A stretch of 64,000 nt of DNA. Origin: Rebecca billardiae RCC1528. Its lineage: Eukaryota > Protista > Haptophyta. Every line of letters starts with the position of its first letter. Positions within the stretch are counted from its first letter, which is position 1. The position numbers and the translations under genes are program-made. The DNA lies in the NCBI GenBank assembly GCA_965240325.2, contig OZ251230.1, positions 1,922,001 to 1,986,000 of the forward strand, given 5' to 3'. A model generated the notes under the pieces. That model ran no database searches and had not been told where the DNA came from. It saw nothing but the letters and a program-made list of their open reading frames with translations. Positions 40,702 through 49,521 of the stretch are shown one piece after another.

Positions 40702-43700
40702 TTAGAGCATCTCCGCGTATGTGCCGTCGGGCGAAGCGGCGCCCTCGCCGTTATTGGCCTTTGGCTTGCGCGACTCTCTCTGCGAGTCTGCCCCCGCCGC
40801 GCCGCGCCTCGAGCGGATCGACTGCATGAAGCCGAGCACGACAGGCAGCAGCACGAGGCCGTGCAGCGAGCCGCACAGCACCGTCGCCAGGTACATCCGG
40901 AAGTAGTACACCTGGAACACCGGGTACTTTGCGAACGCGAGCACGAGCACGCCGAGCAGCGTGGTGATCCCTCCGCTCACGACCGAGGAGCCGACAGAGC
41001 TCATGCACTTGCGCAGCTTCTGCACGTGGTCGCCCTGCGAGCGCGGGCGAGGGGCGGGCTGCGAGCGTGAGCGCGGGCTGACGGCGCGGGCGCGCGAGCG
41101 CTGCTGGACGCCCGGCCCTCCGGCCTCCTCCCCATCGCGCCGCTGCCCAGCCCACACGCCCAGCTCGTCGGCGCGCGCGCGCGCGCGCTCGAGCACGCCC
41201 GCGCCTCGGCACGCGGCGCGCACCTCGGCCATGTTGTAGGTCGAGGCGACGTGTGCCAAGTACTCGACAGAGAGGCCGATCGCCATCACCAGGTTGATGA
41301 TCGAGATGCCTGCGGGGCACGCGCGGCGGGCGCGGGGAGGAGAGGGCGGGTGAGCGGAGCACGGCGCCGTCCGTCGCGCGCGCGCAGCGTCGCGCCGCGC
41401 GCGGCGGGCCGGCCCTTTTCACGCGCGCGTATCCGCGCGCGCGCACCGTTCATGTGCACGTTGGCGAGCTGCATCACGCCGATCAGGTCGATCTGGTTGA
41501 GGACGAGCAGCAGCAGCACGGGCAGCGAGAGCAGCATGTTGCCCAGCAGCAGCGACATCACGCACAGGATCACGACGATGGCGGAGAAGAGCAACTTTGA
41601 CGCCTGCCGGTCGCGGGGCGCGCGCAGCGCCGGGCGCAGGACGGGGGGCGCGCGCGGCGCGGTGAGCGCGCGGCGCGGCGACGGGCGCGCGCGGCGCGCA
41701 CGGGCCGCGGCACGCGGCGTGCCCCGCGCGGCGGCGGCAGCGGCGGCGCGGCGGCGCGCACGTTGGGCACGAGGATGGCGTACTGCTCGTAGAAGACGTG
41801 GTACTCCGAGTAGGGGAAGATACTGACGCCCGTCTTGTCGGCAAACGGCTCACACAACGCGCGCATGTCGAGCATCGCCTGGACAAACTCGTCGGTGCTC
41901 TGCAGCGGCACGTGGAAGCCCATCACCTGCGCCGCGTCTGCAGGTGCGCGCGCGCGCGCGAGCGGCCGCGTGCGCAGACGGCGGGGAGCGGCGTGAGCGA
42001 GAGGGGGCGCGTCGCGCCACACGCGCCGCGCCGCGCGTCATGCGTGCGCCGCGCCGCGCCGCGCCGCGTCGCGCGCGCGACGAGCGCGCGCGCGCGCGCG
42101 CGCGCCGCACCGAGCCGCCCGGTCCGCGGGCAGAAGGAGAGGTAGTTCGCGTAGAACGCAAAGTCCGAGCCGGGCGCGAGGAACTCGCGCAGCCACGGGT
42201 AGAACTTGTCGACGGGCACGCGGCCCTCTGCGTCGATCACCTCCTGCGTGTGGTTCGAGACGACGAGCGCCCACTTTTGAAAGTCGCCGAGCCAGTCGAG
42301 AGCTGGCGGCTTGATCCACGGCGAGAGCTCGAGCGCGCGCACGAGCTCGCCGAGCACGTCCTGCGTCTCGTGCGACGAGAAGTCCACGCGCGGCCCCGGC
42401 GCGTCGTCCGGGTCCGCGCCCCTCTTCGCCGTCGTTATGTACACCGGCGGGCCGATGTCGGAATAGAATTCGAAGCGCTCAAAAAAGGTGGCCATGTAGC
42501 TCCCCTTGGGCAGCACCTCGCCAATCTCGAGGCCCTGGGCCACGTTGAGCGCGTGCGAGAGCGCGCCGAGGAAGAGCACGCCGAACGCGAGCAGCACGCC
42601 CCACCGCGTCGACGGCCGGTTGAGCCACGTGACGTACGTCGTCGAGAGCCAGCGGCTGAGCTCGTCGCCGGGCACGTCGTCGTCGCGAGGCTTCATCAGC
42701 TCGCGCACGTGTGACGGGCGGCGGTGGCGGCGCGGCGGCGCGTGCGCGGAGGGCGCGCGGCCGTTGGCGGCGCTGGGCTTGGCGCCGCCGCCGCCGCCGC
42801 CCGCGCCGTTGCCGCTCGGCGACTCGTGCCCGTTGCCGCCGCCGTGCGCACCCTCCTCGCGCGGCGCGGGCGGGTGGCCGCCGCCGCCCTCGGCGCGCGC
42901 GTGCGCGTCGGCCGCGCCCTCGGCCGCGCCCGCGCCGCGCCGGTCGAGCAGCCCGCCGACGCACGGCGTGAGGCAGGGCATGCAGTCGAGCTTGGACGCG
43001 CGCACGCGCCGCGCGTCCGCGGCGATCGCCGCGCCGAACACCGTCAGCTGCAGCGCGAGGTTCACCGCGAAGCCGAGAACGCACTGCTGGCAGAAGTACT
43101 TCACCGCCGGCATCACCGAGAGCGAGCCGACGGCGAACGCGAGCGTGGTCGCGGTGGAGGTGAGCGTGATGGTCGGGCCGACCTGCGCGAGGATCGAGCC
43201 AACGAGCTGCGCCGGCGTGAGCACGCGCGTGCGCGGCTCGCGGATCCGCGCGATGTACGTGTTCGAGAGGATGAAGATATTGTCCACGCCGATGCCGAGC
43301 AGCAGAAACGGCAGCACCTGCGTCGAGACCGGCGTGAACGGCACGCGCAGCAGCACAGTGAGGCCGAGCATGATGATGATGGAGCAGATCACGAGCGCGA
43401 CGCCGGTGAGGCCGAGCAGCACGTGCGAGCTAGTGCGCTGCGTCCCCGACATCGCGAACACCACGTACATGATCATCATCACGTACGACATGGCGAGCAA
43501 CGGGACGTCGGCGGAGGCGAGCCGCGCCACCTCCTCGTCCTGCGAGACCTGCGCCATGTAGGAGACCTGAACGTGCTGCGCGCGCGCGTTGGCGCGCTCG
43601 GCGACGTCGAGGAAGCCGTACTCGTACGCGCGCGCCTTCTCGAACGGCTTGCGCTCGAGCAGGATCGCGATCATCAGCGAGCGCGCGCGCAGCACGCGGC

Positions 43701-46700
43701 CGTGTCCGTCCGACTCGAGCCCGCCCAGCACCGTCTTGCGCAGGATCGGGATGCCGCACTCGTCCTTGGCAGCGAGGTTGGAGACGGTGGCGTAAAGGTC
43801 GTCGTCCGTGCGGTACGCGCGGCGCGGCCAGTACTTGAGCGGCGACTGGAAGACGCACGTCGTCGACTCGTTCGCCGCGGGGTTCCGGCACTGCACGCGC
43901 GAGCACACCTCGCCGAGCGTCGCGGTCGCGCCGTCCTTGGTGTACTGCAGGCTGCGCAGCTCCTCCTCGACGTCGGCTGCCTCGTCGAGGGCGGCGGGAA
44001 AGAGCACGTCGCCGCCGGGCTCCTTCGTCGTGATGATCATCACCTCGTGCCGCTGCTGCCCGAACCGCTCCGCGGTGAAGTCCGCCTGCCACACCGACGG
44101 CGTGCCCTGCGCCACCCACAGCTCGGTCGGCTTCGTCTCGAGCGAGAGGTTGCCGAGCTGCCCGAACGACCACGTGAGCGCGATCGCGAGCAGGACGAGG
44201 GCGTACACAGGATGCGCGGCGGTGAAGTGGCCGAGCGTGTAGTACGCCTCCTCGATGCGCTCGTACAGCGCGGTCGCGACCCCCTCGCCGTACGCCGCGT
44301 CCGACGGGAGCACGTCCACGCCGCCCGCGCCCGCCGATGGGCCGAGCACCGGTGAGCCTGGCTTGGATGGGGCGTCGCTGCTGCTGCCGCTGCTGCCCGC
44401 GCCGCCCGCCGCGTGCTCCGCCGGCGAGGCGGCGGCGGGCGCGGCGGAGCCGCACGCGCAGAGCGCCACGCCGAACGCCGCGGCGAGGATGCACGCGAAG
44501 ATCAGCAGGTACATCGGGATGCGGCCCGGGTGGCGCAGCGGCTCTGTCGGCAGCGTGTCGAAGCCAATCGCGAGCTCTGAGAGCGGCGGCGGGTCGGTGC
44601 ACGTGGTCTGCGCGTCGGCGGCGCCGACGCCCATCTTGGAGAAGGGGTTCTTGCCCACGAGGATGCGCAGCTGCGCCACCTCCTTCGTCTTCACGCCCGA
44701 CGCGATCTTCTCGAGCAGCTCCTCCGCGTCCTCAAAGTAGGTTTCCACGGTCGTGGTCGCGAGCATCTTGTGCGAAGCGCAGTCGTGCCACAGAGCGTCC
44801 GCCATCGCCGGGTCGACGTAGATGGTGACGTTGAACGAGCCGTCGGCGTTGGCGGTGACGTTGGACATGTAGTCGGCCTGGTGCGGCGAGCACGCCAGCC
44901 CGCACACCAGCTCGCTCAGCCGCTCGAAGCAGCACCCCTTCCCGAAGATGGGCGAGGCGACCGCGGTCAGGTTGCCGCCAATCGTCACCTCCAGGTCGAC
45001 CTCGCAGCACGACATCTCGCGGTACTGGCTGCAGAAGTTGAGCGGGCGCGGCTTGGCCTCGACCTGGAGGCACGCGGCCTGCGGCGCCGAGTCGAGCGTG
45101 CCCTCGAGGTCGGGCACCGGCTCGGGCAGCGGCCCGCCCGGCAGCATCGTGTCGCCGATCGCCAGGCCGGTGTCTGGGTTGGCGCCGACGCGCGCCATGA
45201 GCGTCGCCTTCCCCGGCCCAGGCTTGTACGTCGGGTCGGAGGTGACGGAGAAGGCCTCGCAGAACTGCACGGCGGTGGGGTACAGGTTGCCCAGCGTGTC
45301 GCCGAAGATCTCGGAGTACGCACCGCGGCACTTGGCGTACAGCCCGTCGCAGTACGACGGCGACAAGTAGTAGGACGCGTTGAGCGAGCCGTCAGGCAGG
45401 GGCACGGGCACGCCGTGCGCGTCGCGCTGCACCCACACAAAGTACGACTGGCGCGGCGAGCACGCCGAGGCGCAGGTGAGCGCGAGCACGGCGGGGAGGC
45501 ACTCGGAGCTCCCGCCCCCAAAGTTGCGCTTGAGCAGCTGCAGCTTCGACGAGAGCATGTGCTCCGACTCCGCGTAGCAGCACGCCGCCTCGTTGTGCTG
45601 CTTGCACAGCTCGAGGCCCGGCGCCGCGACCGCGTGGATCGGCTCGTCGTCCGAGAGCGGGCAGGTCTTGCCGACCTCGGCGGCGTTGGCGAGGCCGGGG
45701 ACGAGCGAGCGGCCGAACTGGCGCCGCGGCGGCCGGCCCACGCCCGCCTCGATCGTCGGCGCCGGCTTGCTCGGCGCCACCGCCACGGACACCTGCACGG
45801 TGCTCGCCGCGCGCTCGCGCGAACGTGAGCGCCTCGAGCGCCGGCCGCCGCCGCCGCCGCCGTCGCTCGAGCTGCCGCTCAGCTGGTGGTGGGCGGTCTT
45901 GGGCGGCGCGCGGCCGGGCGCGACGTCGGCGAAGACGGCGGCGAGCGCGTGGCAGAACGACGCGCCGTCCGTCACGCCGTGCTCCTCCAGCGCGCCCGCG
46001 CCGCCGCACGCGCCGAGCATGCGCTCGCACGCCGCCGGCAGTACAAAAACATGCTGCGAGTCCGACTCCGACTCGGCCGGGTCGACAAAGGTGGCCTGGC
46101 GGTCGGAGCAGCCGATGCCGCACATCGCGGCGGTGACGTTGGCCGCGCACGCGCCGCCCGCCGCCGCGAGCGCCTTCCCGAACGCCGACGTCGGCGCCTC
46201 CGCCCAGTCGGCGAGCCGCGCCGCCTCGGCGGGCGTGCAGCACGACGCGACGGCGTGCGCGGCGCACACGCTGCCCTCCAGCTGCGCCAGCGCCTCCGCC
46301 TCGTCGTCGTCGTCGTCGTCGCCGCCGCCGCCGAGCTGCGCGCCCGCGAGCCAGTCGTACGGCGCGCGGCCCTCGGTGCCGAGCGGGCACGCGTCCTTGG
46401 GCGCGTCGCACTCCGGCACGTCCACGCAGCGCTGCTGCGAGAGCATCAGGTCGCCCGGCGTCGTCTCGTCGTAATGCGAGTGCGGCTCAAACTTGTACCG
46501 CGGCGTGTGCGGCCCCGGCTCGAGCATCATGTTGAGGTACGGGCCGATGAGGGAGCACATCGCGGTGGAGTCGGAGAACTTCTCGGAGAACTTCTTGTTG
46601 TCCCGCGGGTCCGTCTCGTCCTTGCACGCCGCCACGATGTCCTCGCACCAGTCCTCGGAGACGCGGATCGTCACGTTCAGCGAGCCGTCCCTGTTGGTCT

Positions 46701-48601
46701 TGGGGTACGACGTGCGCGCGAACAGGTGCTGCGAGGGCGAGCAGAGCGTGGTGCACGCGAGCTTGGCGAACTCGTGGCCGCAGGTCGGGTTGTGCAGGAT
46801 CCCGCCCAGCAGCGCGAGGTTCGAGTCGAGCGTGCTCATGTGCTCGCCGTCGCAGCACGTGGTCTCGCCCGGGCCGAAGAAGTGGCGGCACTCCCCGCCA
46901 GCGCCGCTCACGGTGACGGGGCCGTGCGGCGCGCCGTGCGTCGTGCACCGCTCGAGCTCGGGCGTGGGGTCGCCCTCGTCGGAGAGGTACGCCTCGACCT
47001 GCGTCTGCTCGCACGTCTGCTTCAGCATCTCGCCCGCCAGCACCGTCGCCGCCGGGCCGAGCGGCCCGTTCGGGTCGGTGATCGTCACCTTGACGCGCGC
47101 GCCGAGCTCGGGCCGAGCCGAGCGCGCGAGCGGCAGCAGCGCCTGCGCGCCGTGCGCGCAGATCTCGAGCGACGAGTTGAAGGCGGCGCCGAGCGCGGTG
47201 CCCGACTGCGCCGAGAGCTCGCAGGCGCAGTCGCGGTGCAGCATCTCGCAGAAGTTCGCGCCGAGCCGCACGCTCAGCTGCGGCGTGCCGTCCTCGTCCT
47301 CGTCGACGCTCACGCCGTCCTGCTGGTCGTACCCACACCCGGCCTGGCAGAGCAGCGAGCGCAGCTGCAGCGCGCACTTGGACTCGGTGACGATCTGGTC
47401 GGTGCCGTAGCCGCGGAGCAGCCCGCGCAGCCCGTCCTCGAGCATCGCCTGCTGCTCCGCCGTGCAGCACCCCTCGCCCTCCACGTCGTGCGCGCACAGG
47501 GGCGCGCCGGGCGGCGGCTCGGGCGGACCGTCCTTTGTGCGGAGCGGCGGCTCGGGCATCGTCGCCAGCGTCACCGTGCAGATGGGCTGCTCGTGCTCGC
47601 GGTCGCCGTAGACGGTGTCGTCGGAGCATTCCGGCGCGAAGTACATGTCCGCGAGCGCGTGCGACTCCGCGTCCGAGCGGTGCGTGAGCATGCGGAACGT
47701 GTGGAGCAGCTTGAAGAACTCTCCCCGCGCGTCCTCCAGCTCAGCGTCCGTGCACGCGTCGCGCATCCGCGTGCAGAGCGCGCGCGGCACGGTGCGCGTG
47801 ATGCGCTTCTTCTCCTCCTCGGAGTTGATCTTGAGCGCGGGCAGGTGGAACTGCCGGTAGCTGTACACGTCGCCGCTCTTCGCGATCTCCTCGGGCGTGA
47901 TCGAGGGCACGCACGAGACCCACGACGCCCCGCACGCGTGCCGCCGGCTCGCAATCTTGCATGTCTCGGTCGCGCGCTTGATGGCGCCGAGCGGGCCCTT
48001 CACCATCGCCGCGTCCGCGCCCGTCGGGTCGTGCATCGGCACCGCCTGCGCGGCGCGGCGGGCGCGGCGCCGCGCCCAGGGCACACGGCCGCGACCGCGT
48101 GAGCGAATGGCTGAGGGGGCGGAGCTCGGCGCGGCGCGGGGCCGTCGCGCTCGCGCGCGCGCGCACCTCGCTTGGGTCCCAGATGATCGCCCCATCGGGC
48201 ACGAGCCCTTCGCACGACGACCACGCCACCGACGCGTGGTCAATGCAGTAGACTGGCTTGAACTCGCCGCCATCCGGATGCAGGTTGAGCTCGGCATCTG
48301 CGGGTGCGCGGTGCCGCGCCGCGCACGTGGCCGCGCGGGGAAGGGGGCGCGTGCGGGCGAGGCGGAGCGTCGAGCAGCTGCACATGTGGCCCACCATAGG
48401 ATCTCACCGCCGCAGTATCGAGAGCGCACTGCGCTGCGCGCGTGCACGCGCGCCCGAGACCCAACTCGCACTCACACGTCGTGTCGCGTGCGGCCGCGCG
48501 CGGCACGGAGTGCGAGCGCGCGCACCAGCGCCGGGGGGAGCACCCGCGAGTGCCAGCAACACCACCGGAATCACCACCGCCTGGGATAGACGCGGCGCCA
48601 T
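40702..48601 (-). CDS. NPC1: Niemann-Pick C1-like sterol transporter, multi-exon, with expanded N-terminal Cys-rich domains
   Basis: Signal peptide MAPRLSQAVVIPVVLLALA. ETKPTELWV, sterol-sensing domain (VLPFLLLGIGVDNIFIL, VGPTITLT, MPAVKYF), IGPPVY, FPYSEYHVFYEQY, NLVMAIGLSVEYLAHV, YYFRMYL, HGLVLLPV. About 7 GC-rich introns; the 5' exon boundaries are approximate. Confidence 0.92.
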
Positions 48602-49218
48602 CGTGCGTCAGCGCACTGCCACGACAAATGAGGTCGCGCGTGCGCCCCGCCCCAAAGCGGTGCTGCCTACTTCTCGCAGAACCGGGTGCATCCCGGGCGC
48701 CCGGCCGCTCGTGCGAAGAACCAGGGGCAAAGTTGAATACGGCGACCCGGATCCTTGGGCTACAGCCCCTGCGCGCCCGGCATCCGAAACGCCTGTGCCG
48801 CGCGCACAGGGTGTGTACCGCGTGCGAACACCAAGAGGTGCTGCCGGGTAGCGAGAGGCCCAATAAGATTCGAGCAGCCAAAGATTCCCTCGGCTTTCGG
48901 ATTTTCGTTTTTCTGACTGATTTTTTGGGCAAGTTGCCGGACGCCATCGTGCTGCGTGCCTCCGTTTTTCGGGCGCGGATTTTCGATTTTCAGCGCCGAT
49001 TTTGGGCCCGCACTGGCAAGCTCGCGGGCGCGCGGCCGCGGAAGCCGGGCCCGGGCGGGGGAGCAAGGAACCGCTGCCGCTGCCGCCGGCCGGTGAAAAC
49101 TGAGTGCGAAGGAAGGGAGACTTCGCGGAATCGCGCCTCATCTCCTCAGTTGGCGTCTCGACGACTCGCTCAACGGTGGCGGACGCAGGCTCGCGCGCTC
49201 TCACTTCGTCTCCGCACG

Positions 49219-49521
49219 ATGAACGGCTTCATGCAGAAGGCCAGCGCAGCCGCCGATTCGGCGGGCAAGGCGGTGAAAGTGAAGGCATTTGAGACCGAGA
49301 TCGAGTTCAAGAAGGGCAACATCAAGACGCTCCAGCAGGAGTTTGGTGTGAAGGTGTTCGACCTGGTCGGCGCTTGGAAGGAGGCCGAGATCAAGGCCGC
49401 ACACGCTGAAACAAAGCAAAAGATCGACGCGGTGGAGGCGGAGATCGCGGCCAAGCAGGCTGAGATCGCCCAGCTCAAGCAGCCGGCAGCTCCAGCTGCG
49501 CCGCCAGCAGCTGCGAAGTAG
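49219..49521 (+). CDS. Small coiled-coil hypothetical protein (100 aa)
   Basis: MNGFMQKASAAADSAGKAVKVKAFETEIEFKK... with coding-like codon use and heptad-like K/E/A composition. Divergent from NPC1. Confidence 0.75.
   Translation: MNGFMQKASAAADSAGKAVKVKAFETEIEFKKGNIKTLQQEFGVKVFDLVGAWKEAEIKAAHAETKQKIDAVEAEIAAKQAEIAQLKQPAAPAAPPAAAK

What the first reader, a model, noticed from the sequence alone, without database searches (positions are those of the whole stretch)
44700..47960. NPC1 with five complete (plus one partial) tandem N-terminal sterol-binding-like domains
Seen: the pattern C-x(5-9)-CC...C...L.C...CS..Q..F...C..(L)...C recurs from ~47498 (LCAHDVEGEGCC), 46893 (ECRHFF..TTCC), 46269 (VCAAHAVASCC), 45610 (LCKQHNEAACC) and 45036 (FCSQYREMSCC), with a degenerate copy near 47960-47750. 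Established: canonical NPC1/NCR1 has a single such NTD (folate-receptor-like fold). Inference: a multivalent sterol-capture antenna, perhaps replacing NPC2 hand-off or binding several sterol types.
Basis: partly seen in the sequence, partly recalled or inferred. Interest (0 to 1): 0.75.

Follow-up and report, generated by a model that had tools for sequence, protein, structure and literature searches.

The report
NPC1 transporter with five sterol-domain repeats
A haptophyte alga has one real gene for an NPC1-type lipid transporter that carries five different copies in a row of the sterol-catching head domain that animals and yeast carry once; relatives of the alga share this layout and no paper I could find describes it.

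Summary
One open frame on the minus strand (41923-48471) encodes five tandem Cys-rich domains at the coordinates given. Each matches NPC1_N/Folate_rec in Pfam, though R1 only weakly. They are related to each other by profile comparison at 22-26% identity. As a profile they hit the human NPC1 NTD (E 2e-15) far better than folate receptors (about 6e-3). A confident model of the membrane-proximal copy (pLDDT 89.8) superposes on the NPC1 NTD (Z 13.9).

After the repeats come a Pro-rich linker, TM1, an NPC1 middle luminal domain and a sterol-sensing domain. Four species share the collinear layout, including Diacronema lutheri KAG8468954.1. One orthologue reads straight across four of the window's introns, which argues for a single transcript.

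The "partial sixth copy" is a conserved Cys-rich N-terminal domain with no significant similarity to the repeats. The genome has an NPC2-like gene, so "replacing NPC2" is not supported. The cholesterol-binding Gln79 survives only in the first copy, and only in two of four species. Copies 2 and 3 have their own invariant residue there, so sterol binding by each copy is unproven.

Verdict: a real, ancient new variant of NPC1 whose function is inferred, not shown.

The parts
40702..48601 (-). Whole inferred coding region of the multi-NTD NPC1-like gene: 7 exons, 6 GT-AG introns of 121-189 nt, 6942 nt, giving 2313 codons plus stop
   Evidence: Exon blocks come from tblastn of orthologue P0002. The N-terminal exons come from the D. 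lutheri protein P0153. Splice sites were read from the DNA. The exon lengths sum to a multiple of 3. This is inferred; there is no RNA data.
48478..48601 (-). Exon 1: start codon and signal-peptide-like segment (MAPRLSQAVVIPVVLLALAG...). The donor GT lies at 48477-48476.
   Evidence: The D. lutheri orthologue also begins with a signal peptide. The boundary is the least certain of the model.
48167..48297 (-). Exon 2: first part of the N-terminal Cys-rich domain R0 (...DGGEFKPVYCIDHASVAWSSCEGLVPDGAIIWDPSE)
   Evidence: tblastn of P0153 residues 27-61 matches 48274-48170 at 40% identity. AG and GT flank the exon.
42111..48045 (-). Exon 3 (5935 nt): rest of R0, repeats R1-R5, TM1, middle luminal domain, sterol-sensing domain, TM8 and the start of the C-terminal luminal domain
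   Evidence: Lies in the open frame 41923-48471. The acceptor is at 48047-48046 and the donor at 42110-42109.
47527..48045 (-). R0, exon-3 part: conserved Cys-rich domain with 7 Cys invariant in the orthologues. It is not demonstrably an NTD copy.
   Evidence: No Pfam hit. hhalign probability is below 3% against R1-R5. Identity to the orthologues is 38-40%.
46972..47526 (-). R1 (ORF aa 316-500): NTD-type repeat, the weakest by Pfam. It keeps the Gln79-equivalent in 2 of 4 species.
   Evidence: Folate_rec 19.5 bits and NPC1_N 14.5 bits. hhalign to R4 gives 97% probability. It scores 88.1 bits against family profile A3, which contains it.
46372..46971 (-). R2 (aa 501-700): the best NPC1_N match, with an invariant His at the Gln79 position
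   Evidence: NPC1_N 47.1 bits, E 3e-12. A low-confidence model still has NCR1 and NPC1 NTDs as top Foldseek hits.
45892..46371 (-). R3 (aa 701-860): NTD-type repeat with an invariant Glu at the Gln79 position and a conserved N-V-T/S sequon at the Asn103 position
   Evidence: NPC1_N 24.2 bits. hhalign to R1, R4 and R5 gives about 94-95% probability.
45700..45891 (-). Low-complexity Ser/Gly/Arg-rich linker between R3 and R4, much longer here than in the orthologues
   Evidence: Alignment gaps in P0001 and P0002. A (CGC)n run lies at 45839-45866.
45097..45699 (-). R4 (aa 925-1125): NTD-type repeat, 65-71% identical to P0153 and P0001 and 50% to P0002
   Evidence: Folate_rec 39.0 bits and NPC1_N 27.1 bits, both over the cut-off.
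44572..45096 (-). R5 (aa 1126-1300): the membrane-proximal NTD-type repeat, in the position of the canonical NTD
   Evidence: NPC1_N 26.7 bits. AlphaFold2 model: pLDDT 89.8, pTM 0.84. Foldseek TM-score is 0.61 to 3gkh. VIA Z is 13.9 to the NPC1 NTD, 12.8 to NCR1 and NPC1L1, and 9.9 to Juno.
44437..44601 (-). Invariant C-T-x-PPPLSEL linker and TM1 (IPMYLLIFACILAAAFGVAL), laid out as the Pro-rich linker and TM1 after the NPC1 NTD
   Evidence: Sequence; invariant columns.
43549..44022 (-). NPC1 middle luminal domain
   Evidence: PF22314, 29.6 bits against a cut-off of 27.
42970..43431 (-). Sterol-sensing domain
   Evidence: PF12349, 123.4 bits. The transporter body best matches human NPC1 (E 3.6e-38), ahead of PTCH1 (2e-28).
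40702..41937 (-). Exons 4-7 (41762-41937, 41447-41603, 41224-41309, 40702-41034): the end of the C-terminal luminal domain and the last TM helices
   Evidence: tblastn blocks of P0002 at 64-93% identity.

Best explanation
This is one intact gene for an NPC1-family (RND-type, sterol-sensing-domain) lipid transporter. Its luminal or extracellular N-terminus carries a signal peptide, a Cys-rich domain of unknown kinship (R0), and five tandem, anciently diverged domains of the NPC1-NTD fold (R1-R5). A Pro-rich linker and TM1 follow.

Shown: the architecture, the fold of R5, the NPC1-type transporter body, conservation of the array in four species, and 53 invariant cysteines in R1-R5.

Inferred mechanism: R5 sits where the canonical NTD sits, and most likely hands a lipid into the tunnel between the middle and C-terminal luminal domains. 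R1-R4 would be extra tethered binding modules on the same stalk. They would reach further through a surface coat, and each would have its own pocket chemistry, because the residue at the Gln79 position differs between repeats but is fixed within R2 and R3. On this reading they widen the range of lipids captured, or pass cargo inward, possibly also to the NTD-less NPC1 paralogues of the same genome.
For: Five NPC1_N/Folate_rec stretches lie in one ORF, followed by NPC1_MLD and SSD. The repeats are mutually homologous. A profile of the five hits human NPC1 NTD at E 2e-15, NCR1 at 1e-10 and NPC1L1 at 2.5e-7, against Juno and folate receptors at about 1e-3 to 7e-3.

The R5 model (pLDDT 89.8) aligns to NPC1 NTD residues 37-247 with Z 13.9 and TM-score 0.61. 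The transporter body matches NPC1 best.

The orthologues P0001, P0002 and P0153 (D. lutheri KAG8468954.1) each have five collinear repeats plus the body. Each positional repeat forms its own clade with SH-aLRT 99-100. R5 does so once the orthologue fragments P0003 and P0004, which nest inside it, are counted with it. P0002 is continuous across the window's four 3' introns.

Identity to P0153 and P0001 rises towards the membrane, from R1 at 43-48% to R4 at 65-71% and R5 at 66-67%. His in R2 and Glu in R3 are invariant at the Gln79 position.

The NTD is a tethered module that can act in trans, and can transfer sterol to an NPC1 lacking an NTD (PMC11009665, PMC6062155). The genome has 5 loci with an NPC1-type MLD, but NTD-type domains occur only in this gene.
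Against: No ligand binding was tested. Gln79, whose mutation abolishes cholesterol binding in NPC1 (PMC4718804), is absent from R5 (Leu in three of four species, Asp in the fourth) and from R2-R4. The Asn103 position is Arg in R5. No P202/F203-like motif is recognisable, apart from a 'TPRY' in R2, and that part of the alignment is unreliable.

By contrast, the consensus of the related short proteins keeps Gln79 and Asn103. In the quick tree R1-R3 sit near domains of Filamin-REJ-GPS surface proteins, although the deep nodes are weak. There is no RNA evidence from this organism. Only R5 has a confident model; the R2 model has pLDDT 54.5.
Confidence: 0.55

Rival explanations
1. The extra NTD-fold domains, and perhaps all five, do not bind lipid. 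They act as a rigid disulfide-rich stalk, or as protein- or carbohydrate-binding adhesion modules that place the transporter in a scale or cell-coat layer, or that recognise a partner. Juno and HHIP-N use the same fold to bind proteins.
For: Gln79 is lost in four of five repeats. Distal repeats are less conserved. The same domain type occurs once or twice in Filamin-REJ-GPS surface proteins of Balamuthia and of uncultured protists, and R1-R3 group loosely with those in the tree. The R5 model also matches Juno (Z 9.9) and HHIP-N (Z 5.5).
Against: Every repeat is closer to NPC1, NCR1 and NPC1L1 NTDs than to Juno, folate receptors or HHIP, by sequence profile and by structure for R5. A mere spacer would not be expected to keep repeat-specific invariant residues at the ligand-contact position (His in R2, Glu in R3). 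The array is fused to a transporter whose known input is an NTD-bound lipid.
Confidence: 0.25
2. The repeats bind small polar or aromatic nutrients, such as folate- or riboflavin-like vitamins, as folate receptors and riboflavin-binding protein do. The protein would then be a capture-and-uptake receptor rather than a sterol transporter.
For: R1 and R4 score slightly better with Pfam Folate_rec than with NPC1_N. The R5 model matches riboflavin-binding protein at Z 9.2.
Against: Profile E-values favour NPC1-type NTDs by 10 to 30 orders of magnitude. The body is an SSD/RND lipid transporter that matches NPC1 best. No folate-receptor ligand residues were examined.
Confidence: 0.08
3. This is an annotation or reading artefact. 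The long open frame in 72% G+C DNA would merge several separate genes or pseudogene fragments, so the five domains would not be part of one protein.
For: Long spurious ORFs are common in this G+C-rich window. There is no transcript evidence from this organism.
Against: The frame is coding throughout, with Pfam domains along its whole length. Four species keep the same order and all 53 cysteines of R1-R5. There is no signal peptide, stop or TM helix between the repeats. P0002 and the BRAKER2-annotated D. lutheri protein run from R0 to the C-terminus. The inferred exon lengths sum to a multiple of three.
Confidence: 0.03

Closest known systems
Human NPC1, yeast NCR1 and NPC1L1 (NPC1 family of RND-type sterol transporters)
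   Same: The order of parts is the same: luminal NTD, Pro-rich linker, TM1, middle luminal domain, sterol-sensing domain, C-terminal luminal domain. The body matches human NPC1 best (E 3.6e-38). R5 superposes on the NPC1 NTD (Z 13.9) and on the NCR1 and NPC1L1 NTDs (Z 12.8 each). An NPC2-like ML-domain gene is present in the genome.
   Different: There are five NTD-fold domains instead of one, plus an extra Cys-rich R0. The domains are compact, about 150-200 residues. The model lines R5 up with NPC1 residues 37-247 only, and that is shown for R5 alone. Gln79 is not kept in four of the five.
NPC1 variants with modular NTDs: a separately encoded NTD in some fungi, and experimentally split NPC1
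   Same: These show that the NTD is a tethered, separable binding module that can work in trans (PMC11009665, PMC6062155). That makes gain or loss of NTD modules mechanistically plausible.
   Different: Those cases have one NTD, or none, per system. Here five are fused in cis, while four other NPC1-MLD-type loci of the same genome show no NTD.
Folate receptor, Juno and riboflavin-binding protein family (Pfam Folate_rec), including the Branchiostoma protein C3Y1A9 with five Folate_rec domains
   Same: The disulfide-rich fold is the same (Z 9-10 for R5). Tandem arrays of this superfamily exist elsewhere: the Branchiostoma protein has 5 Folate_rec stretches at 707 bits.
   Different: The repeats here are much closer to NPC1-type NTDs. 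The amphioxus array is attached to CTHRC1 domains, not to a transporter.
Filamin-REJ-GPS surface proteins of Balamuthia mandrillaris (KAL6058314.1, KAL6063572.1) and of uncultured protists
   Same: They carry one to three copies of an NPC1_N/Folate_rec-like domain. These are among the best-scoring relatives of the window's repeats outside the orthologues.
   Different: They have no SSD transporter body. The domains are embedded among filamin repeats, a REJ domain and, in some, a GPS motif.

Membership tests
NPC1/NCR1 family of sterol transporters | Sterol-sensing domain within an RND-type membrane body | tested here: met
   PF12349 at 123.4 bits and Patched SSD at 65.9 bits. The best PDB matches are NPC1 (E 3.6e-38) and NPC1L1 (8e-36), ahead of PTCH1 (2e-28).
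NPC1/NCR1 family of sterol transporters | NPC1-type middle luminal domain between TM2 and the SSD | tested here: met
   PF22314 at 29.6 bits, just over the cut-off of 27. The same domain is found in the orthologues.
NPC1/NCR1 family of sterol transporters | Luminal N-terminal domain of the NPC1_N fold, joined by a Pro-rich linker to an extra TM1 | tested here: met
   R5 precedes an invariant PPPLSEL linker and TM1. The R5 model scores Z 13.9 against 3gkh. The profile of the repeats hits the NPC1 NTD at E 2e-15.
NPC1/NCR1 family of sterol transporters | A single NTD per polypeptide (the canonical architecture) | tested here: not met
   The window protein and three full-length orthologues each have five NTD-type domains.
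NPC1/NCR1 family of sterol transporters | Sterol-contact residue Gln79 (the Q79A mutation abolishes cholesterol binding; PMC4718804) | tested here: not met
   The residues at this position are R1 Q/Q/D/E, R2 H in all four species, R3 E in all four, R4 S/Q/A/N and R5 L/L/D/L. The membrane-proximal R5 lacks it.
NPC1/NCR1 family of sterol transporters | P202/F203 motif of the NTD, needed for binding and transfer (PMC4718804) | tested here: inconclusive
   The HMM alignment places no Pro-Phe at these positions. R2 has 'TPRY' nearby, and R1 and R3 are mostly gapped there. This part of the alignment is unreliable.
NPC1/NCR1 family of sterol transporters | An NPC2 (ML-domain) partner encoded in the genome | tested here: met
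   PF02221 at 64.9 bits, E 5e-16, at G000:C33:919179-919541. No interaction was tested.
NPC1/NCR1 family of sterol transporters | Binding and transport of sterol | not testable with these tools
   This needs binding assays and genetics.
Folate receptor family (Pfam PF03024) | Match to the family profile above its gathering score, and closer to it than to sister families | tested here: not met
   Only R4 exceeds the cut-off (39.0 against 29.8 bits). The profiles favour NPC1-type NTDs: 2e-15 against about 6e-3, and 7e-47 against 5e-8. Structural Z is 13.9 for NPC1 against 9.9 for Juno.

The most novel reading that the evidence does not exclude
The five NTDs are five different lipid pockets on one stalk. 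Together they form a relay that captures chemically different sterols and passes them inward across a thick coat to the transporter tunnel. Pavlovophytes make unusual dihydroxylated sterols, the pavlovols (PMC8379373). The relay would also supply, in trans, the NTD-less NPC1 paralogues of the same cell. This would be a natural multi-specific 'bucket brigade' version of the NPC2-to-NTD hand-off.
Probability: 0.15. Interest if true: 0.8.

Novelty: new variant of a known kind. Interest (0 to 1): 0.6.

Why it matters
NPC1 is a disease gene and a virus receptor, and its single NTD is the entry point of the sterol hand-off. Whether the NTD is only a tethered catcher, and how it couples to the transporter core, is still debated (PMC11009665, PMC6062155). 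Here the catcher has been multiplied five times and each copy has been kept for a long time. That gives a ready-made comparative system: five diverged pockets on one known scaffold, in a lineage with unusual sterols. It may show what determines NTD ligand specificity, reach and hand-off. It also shows that NPC1 domain architecture varies more across eukaryotes than the animal and fungal models suggest. The practical value depends on binding data that do not yet exist.

Tried and rejected
- **Sixth copy (R0).** I tested R0 with Pfam. I also ran hhalign and hmmsearch against three repeat profiles, including the complete natural R0 of the D. lutheri protein, and the ESM Atlas. Nothing was significant. 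Only the cysteine order is collinear with the repeats. The first Atlas call failed on a length limit.
- **Recent tandem duplication.** Rejected. There is no DNA-level repeat, the copies are 22-26% identical, and each positional repeat is a clade across species.
- **Other NTD-bearing genes in the genome.** None were found with NPC1_N, Folate_rec or the family profile A3.
- **Wider distribution.** Two word searches gave only P0001 and P0002. The 1.84-billion-protein profile search gave orthologue fragments, many two-repeat fragments of unknown context, Filamin-REJ proteins and ordinary single-NTD NPC1s. Short fragments can stand as cluster representatives and hide full-length members: P0004, 185 aa, hides the 2263-aa P0153. 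Counts are therefore lower bounds.
- **Mya arenaria WAR17615.1.** This "NPC1-like" model with two NTDs looks like a merger of tandem genes, not a true precedent.
- **Metagenome contigs.** The related-loci scan confirmed nothing.
- **Literature.** Five searches found no description of a multi-NTD NPC1, and no paper linking NPC1 to haptophytes in this sense.
- **Joined model.** I did not build or search a joined spliced protein. Exons were handled by reference only.


Full report
**What is there**

The window is G+C-rich eukaryotic DNA. It comes from a 72-Mb, 41-contig genome that earlier notes of this scan call haptophyte-type. On the minus strand a single open frame runs from 48471 to 41923, 2182 codons.

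Pfam finds five NPC1_N and five Folate_rec stretches. After them come NPC1_MLD (29.6 bits), the sterol-sensing domain (123.4 bits) and Patched SSD.

Scanned one by one, the repeats score as follows:

| Repeat | NPC1_N (bits; cut-off 27) | Folate_rec (bits; cut-off 29.8) |
|---|---|---|
| R2 | 47.1 | 28.6 |
| R4 | 27.1 | 39.0 |
| R5 | 26.7 | 21.2 |
| R3 | 24.2 | 22.6 |
| R1 | 14.5 | 19.5 |

Profile-profile comparison of orthologue alignments ties R1-R5 together at 86-98% probability. R1-R5 is 23%, but R1-R4 is 97%. The copies are only 22-26% identical, and there is no repeat at the DNA level. This is an old array, not a recent duplication or an assembly artefact.

**Which fold**

A profile of the five repeats hits:
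- human NPC1 NTD at E 2e-15
- yeast NCR1 at 1e-10
- NPC1L1 at 2.5e-7
- Juno and folate receptors at about 1e-3 to 7e-3
- HHIP at 0.03.

A first model of R2, built from a five-row alignment, was poor (pLDDT 54.5). It still ranked the NCR1 and NPC1 NTDs first.

With an 82-row alignment built from hits of the large profile search, R5 gave a confident model: pLDDT 89.8, pTM 0.84. Foldseek ranks the NPC1 NTD first (TM-score 0.61). The Foldseek-independent aligner gives:
- Z 13.9 to 3gkh (164 of 175 residues, rmsd 3.3 A, NPC1 residues 37-247)
- Z 12.8 to NCR1 and to NPC1L1
- Z 9.9 to Juno and 9.2 to riboflavin-binding protein
- Z 5.5 and below for HHIP-N and the Frizzled-type cysteine-rich domains.

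The domains are on the NPC1 side of the superfamily. The transporter body also matches NPC1 best (E 3.6e-38, against 2e-28 for PTCH1).

**One gene**

Word searches found two full-length relatives, P0001 (2353 aa) and P0002 (2149 aa). Both have the same Pfam content and align collinearly from R0 to the C-terminus.

The cluster of the fragment P0004 contains P0153. This is KAG8468954.1, a hypothetical protein of Diacronema lutheri (2263 aa; UniRef calls it 'SSD domain-containing protein'). It is 55% identical to the window protein and has five repeats and the body.

P0002 maps to the window in five blocks and is continuous where the window has four short introns. It therefore behaves like a spliced message.

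P0153 starts with a signal peptide, and its next 35 residues match a small exon at 48274-48170. That fixed the 5' end. Reading the splice sites in the DNA gives seven exons:

| Exon | Coordinates (minus strand) |
|---|---|
| 1 | 48601-48478 |
| 2 | 48297-48167 |
| 3 | 48045-42111 |
| 4 | 41937-41762 |
| 5 | 41603-41447 |
| 6 | 41309-41224 |
| 7 | 41034-40702 |

All introns are GT-AG and 121-189 nt long. The exon lengths sum to 6942 nt, which is 2313 codons plus stop. This model is inferred; no RNA was available. Exons were used by reference, and the natural D. lutheri protein stood in for the complete N-terminus.

**The sixth copy**

It is 38-40% identical between species, and seven cysteines in its exon-3 part are invariant. 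But it has no Pfam hit, no significant hhalign or hmmsearch match to any repeat profile even with the complete D. lutheri R0 (probability 0.2-3%), and no Atlas neighbour. Its cysteines can be laid collinearly on the repeat pattern, so an extremely diverged copy is not excluded. It is not shown.

**Age and constraint**

In a quick maximum-likelihood tree of 101 domains, each positional repeat forms a clade across the four species, with SH-aLRT 99-100 and stems of 1.0-1.4 changes per site. R5's clade also includes the orthologue fragments P0003 and P0004. Deeper nodes are unresolved. The careful search did not finish. Rows with short HMM coverage and most long single-domain hits were left out.

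All 53 cysteines of R1-R5 are invariant in the four proteins. Identity of the window protein to P0153 and P0001 rises towards the membrane:

| Part | Identity to P0153 and P0001 |
|---|---|
| R0 | 40% |
| R1 | 43-48% |
| R2 | 56-58% |
| R3 | 44-46% |
| R4 | 65-71% |
| R5 | 66-67% |
| Middle luminal domain | 72-75% |
| Sterol-sensing domain | 83% |

P0002 is more distant throughout (37% in R1, 57% in R5).

**Ligand-site residues**

In NPC1 the Q79A mutation abolishes cholesterol binding and P202A/F203A abolishes binding and transport (PMC4718804). L175Q/L176Q abolishes transfer from NPC2 (PMC6163316).

The consensus of the related short proteins keeps 'CCxxxQxxxL' and 'CxxN'. In the array the two positions read as follows:

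| Repeat | Gln79 position (four species) | Asn103 position |
|---|---|---|
| R1 | Q/Q/D/E | variable |
| R2 | H in all four | E/Q/E/E |
| R3 | E in all four | N in all four, within an N-V-T/S sequon |
| R4 | S/Q/A/N | variable |
| R5 | L/L/D/L | R in all four |

So the copy placed like the canonical NTD lacks the canonical sterol-hydroxyl contact, and two copies have their own fixed residue there. This argues against five equivalent cholesterol sites. It is compatible with different ligands per copy, or with non-lipid roles.

**Genomic context**

The genome has at least 28 loci matching the sterol-sensing domain and five with an NPC1-type middle luminal domain. NPC1_N, Folate_rec and the family-specific profile A3 match nowhere except these five repeats. 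A3 contains the five sequences, so its scores for them are inflated. An NPC2-type ML-domain gene exists (64.9 bits), so the idea that the array replaces NPC2 has no support.

**Distribution and novelty**

The profile search of 1.84 billion representatives gave 599 hits. They fall into these groups:
- Two are fragments of further orthologues, 59-65% identical to R5.
- Many are two-repeat fragments that fill their short contigs, so their context is unknown.
- Others are Filamin-REJ surface proteins, some with a GPS motif, with one to three such domains, for example in Balamuthia.
- One is an amphioxus protein with five true Folate_rec domains.
- The rest are ordinary single-NTD NPC1s.
- A clam 'NPC1-like' model with two NTDs looks like merged tandem genes.

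No other protein combining several NTDs with the transporter body was seen. 'Restricted to pavlovophyte-like haptophytes' is therefore a lower-bound statement.

Five literature searches found no description of this architecture. The D. lutheri protein sits in GenBank as hypothetical.

**Mechanism**

Work on NCR1 concludes that the NTD is a tethered binding domain without allosteric coupling to the core, and that some fungi encode it separately (PMC11009665). Human NPC1 works when the NTD is expressed as a separate fragment, and an NTD can supply an NPC1 molecule that lacks one (PMC6062155). A string of such modules is therefore mechanistically plausible.

My best reading is that R5 feeds the tunnel and R1-R4 extend reach and ligand range, possibly serving the NTD-less paralogues too. 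Pavlovophytes make dihydroxylated sterols unique to the class (PMC8379373), which gives a conceivable reason for several pockets. All of this is inference.

The main rival is that the distal domains are a stalk or are adhesion modules. I put the architecture at about 0.9 and the lipid-array mechanism at about 0.4.

**Verdict**

This is a real, conserved and undescribed variant of a well-known transporter family. It would surprise NPC1 specialists. It is open to direct test, but its function is unproven.

Noticed in passing
G000, whole genome (e.g. C24:843783-844241, C22:331328-331771, C18:298834-299283): At least 28 loci match the sterol-sensing domain, about 15 of them above 95 bits. Five carry an NPC1-type middle luminal domain. 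This is a large expansion of the Patched/NPC1 family for a 72-Mb alga, and only the gene studied here has NTD-type domains.
   Followed up: partly
G000:C33:919179-919541 (locus L004): A single NPC2-type ML-domain match (PF02221, 64.9 bits), on the minus strand of another contig. It is the likely soluble partner of the NPC1-like proteins.
   Followed up: no
window 45700-45891 (-): A Ser/Gly/Arg-rich low-complexity linker between R3 and R4 is about 40-45 residues longer here than in the orthologues. It overlaps a (CGC)n run at 45839-45866, so this is lineage-specific linker expansion.
   Followed up: partly
window about 49180-49521 (+): Upstream of the NPC1-like gene and divergent from it, an ORF encodes a Lys/Ala/Glu-rich, coiled-coil-looking small protein (MNGFMQKASAAADSAGKAVKVKAFETEIEF...). 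The two starts are about 600 bp apart.
   Followed up: no
proteins P0026, P0028, P0010, P0013, P0030, P0059, P0120 (not in the window): Large Filamin-repeat and REJ proteins, some with a GPS motif, from Balamuthia mandrillaris and uncultured protists carry one to three NPC1_N/Folate_rec-like domains near the N-terminus. I have not seen this domain combination described.
   Followed up: partly
protein P0020 (Mya arenaria WAR17615.1): This annotated 'NPC1-like protein' has two NTDs that are 42% identical to each other, with a fragment that looks like part of a middle luminal domain (not tested) between them. It is most likely two tandem NPC1 genes merged in the gene model.
   Followed up: partly
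cluster of P0004: A 185-residue metagenome fragment is the representative of a 90% cluster that also holds the 2263-residue D. lutheri protein. Length-filtered and representative-only searches therefore miss full-length members.
   Followed up: yes
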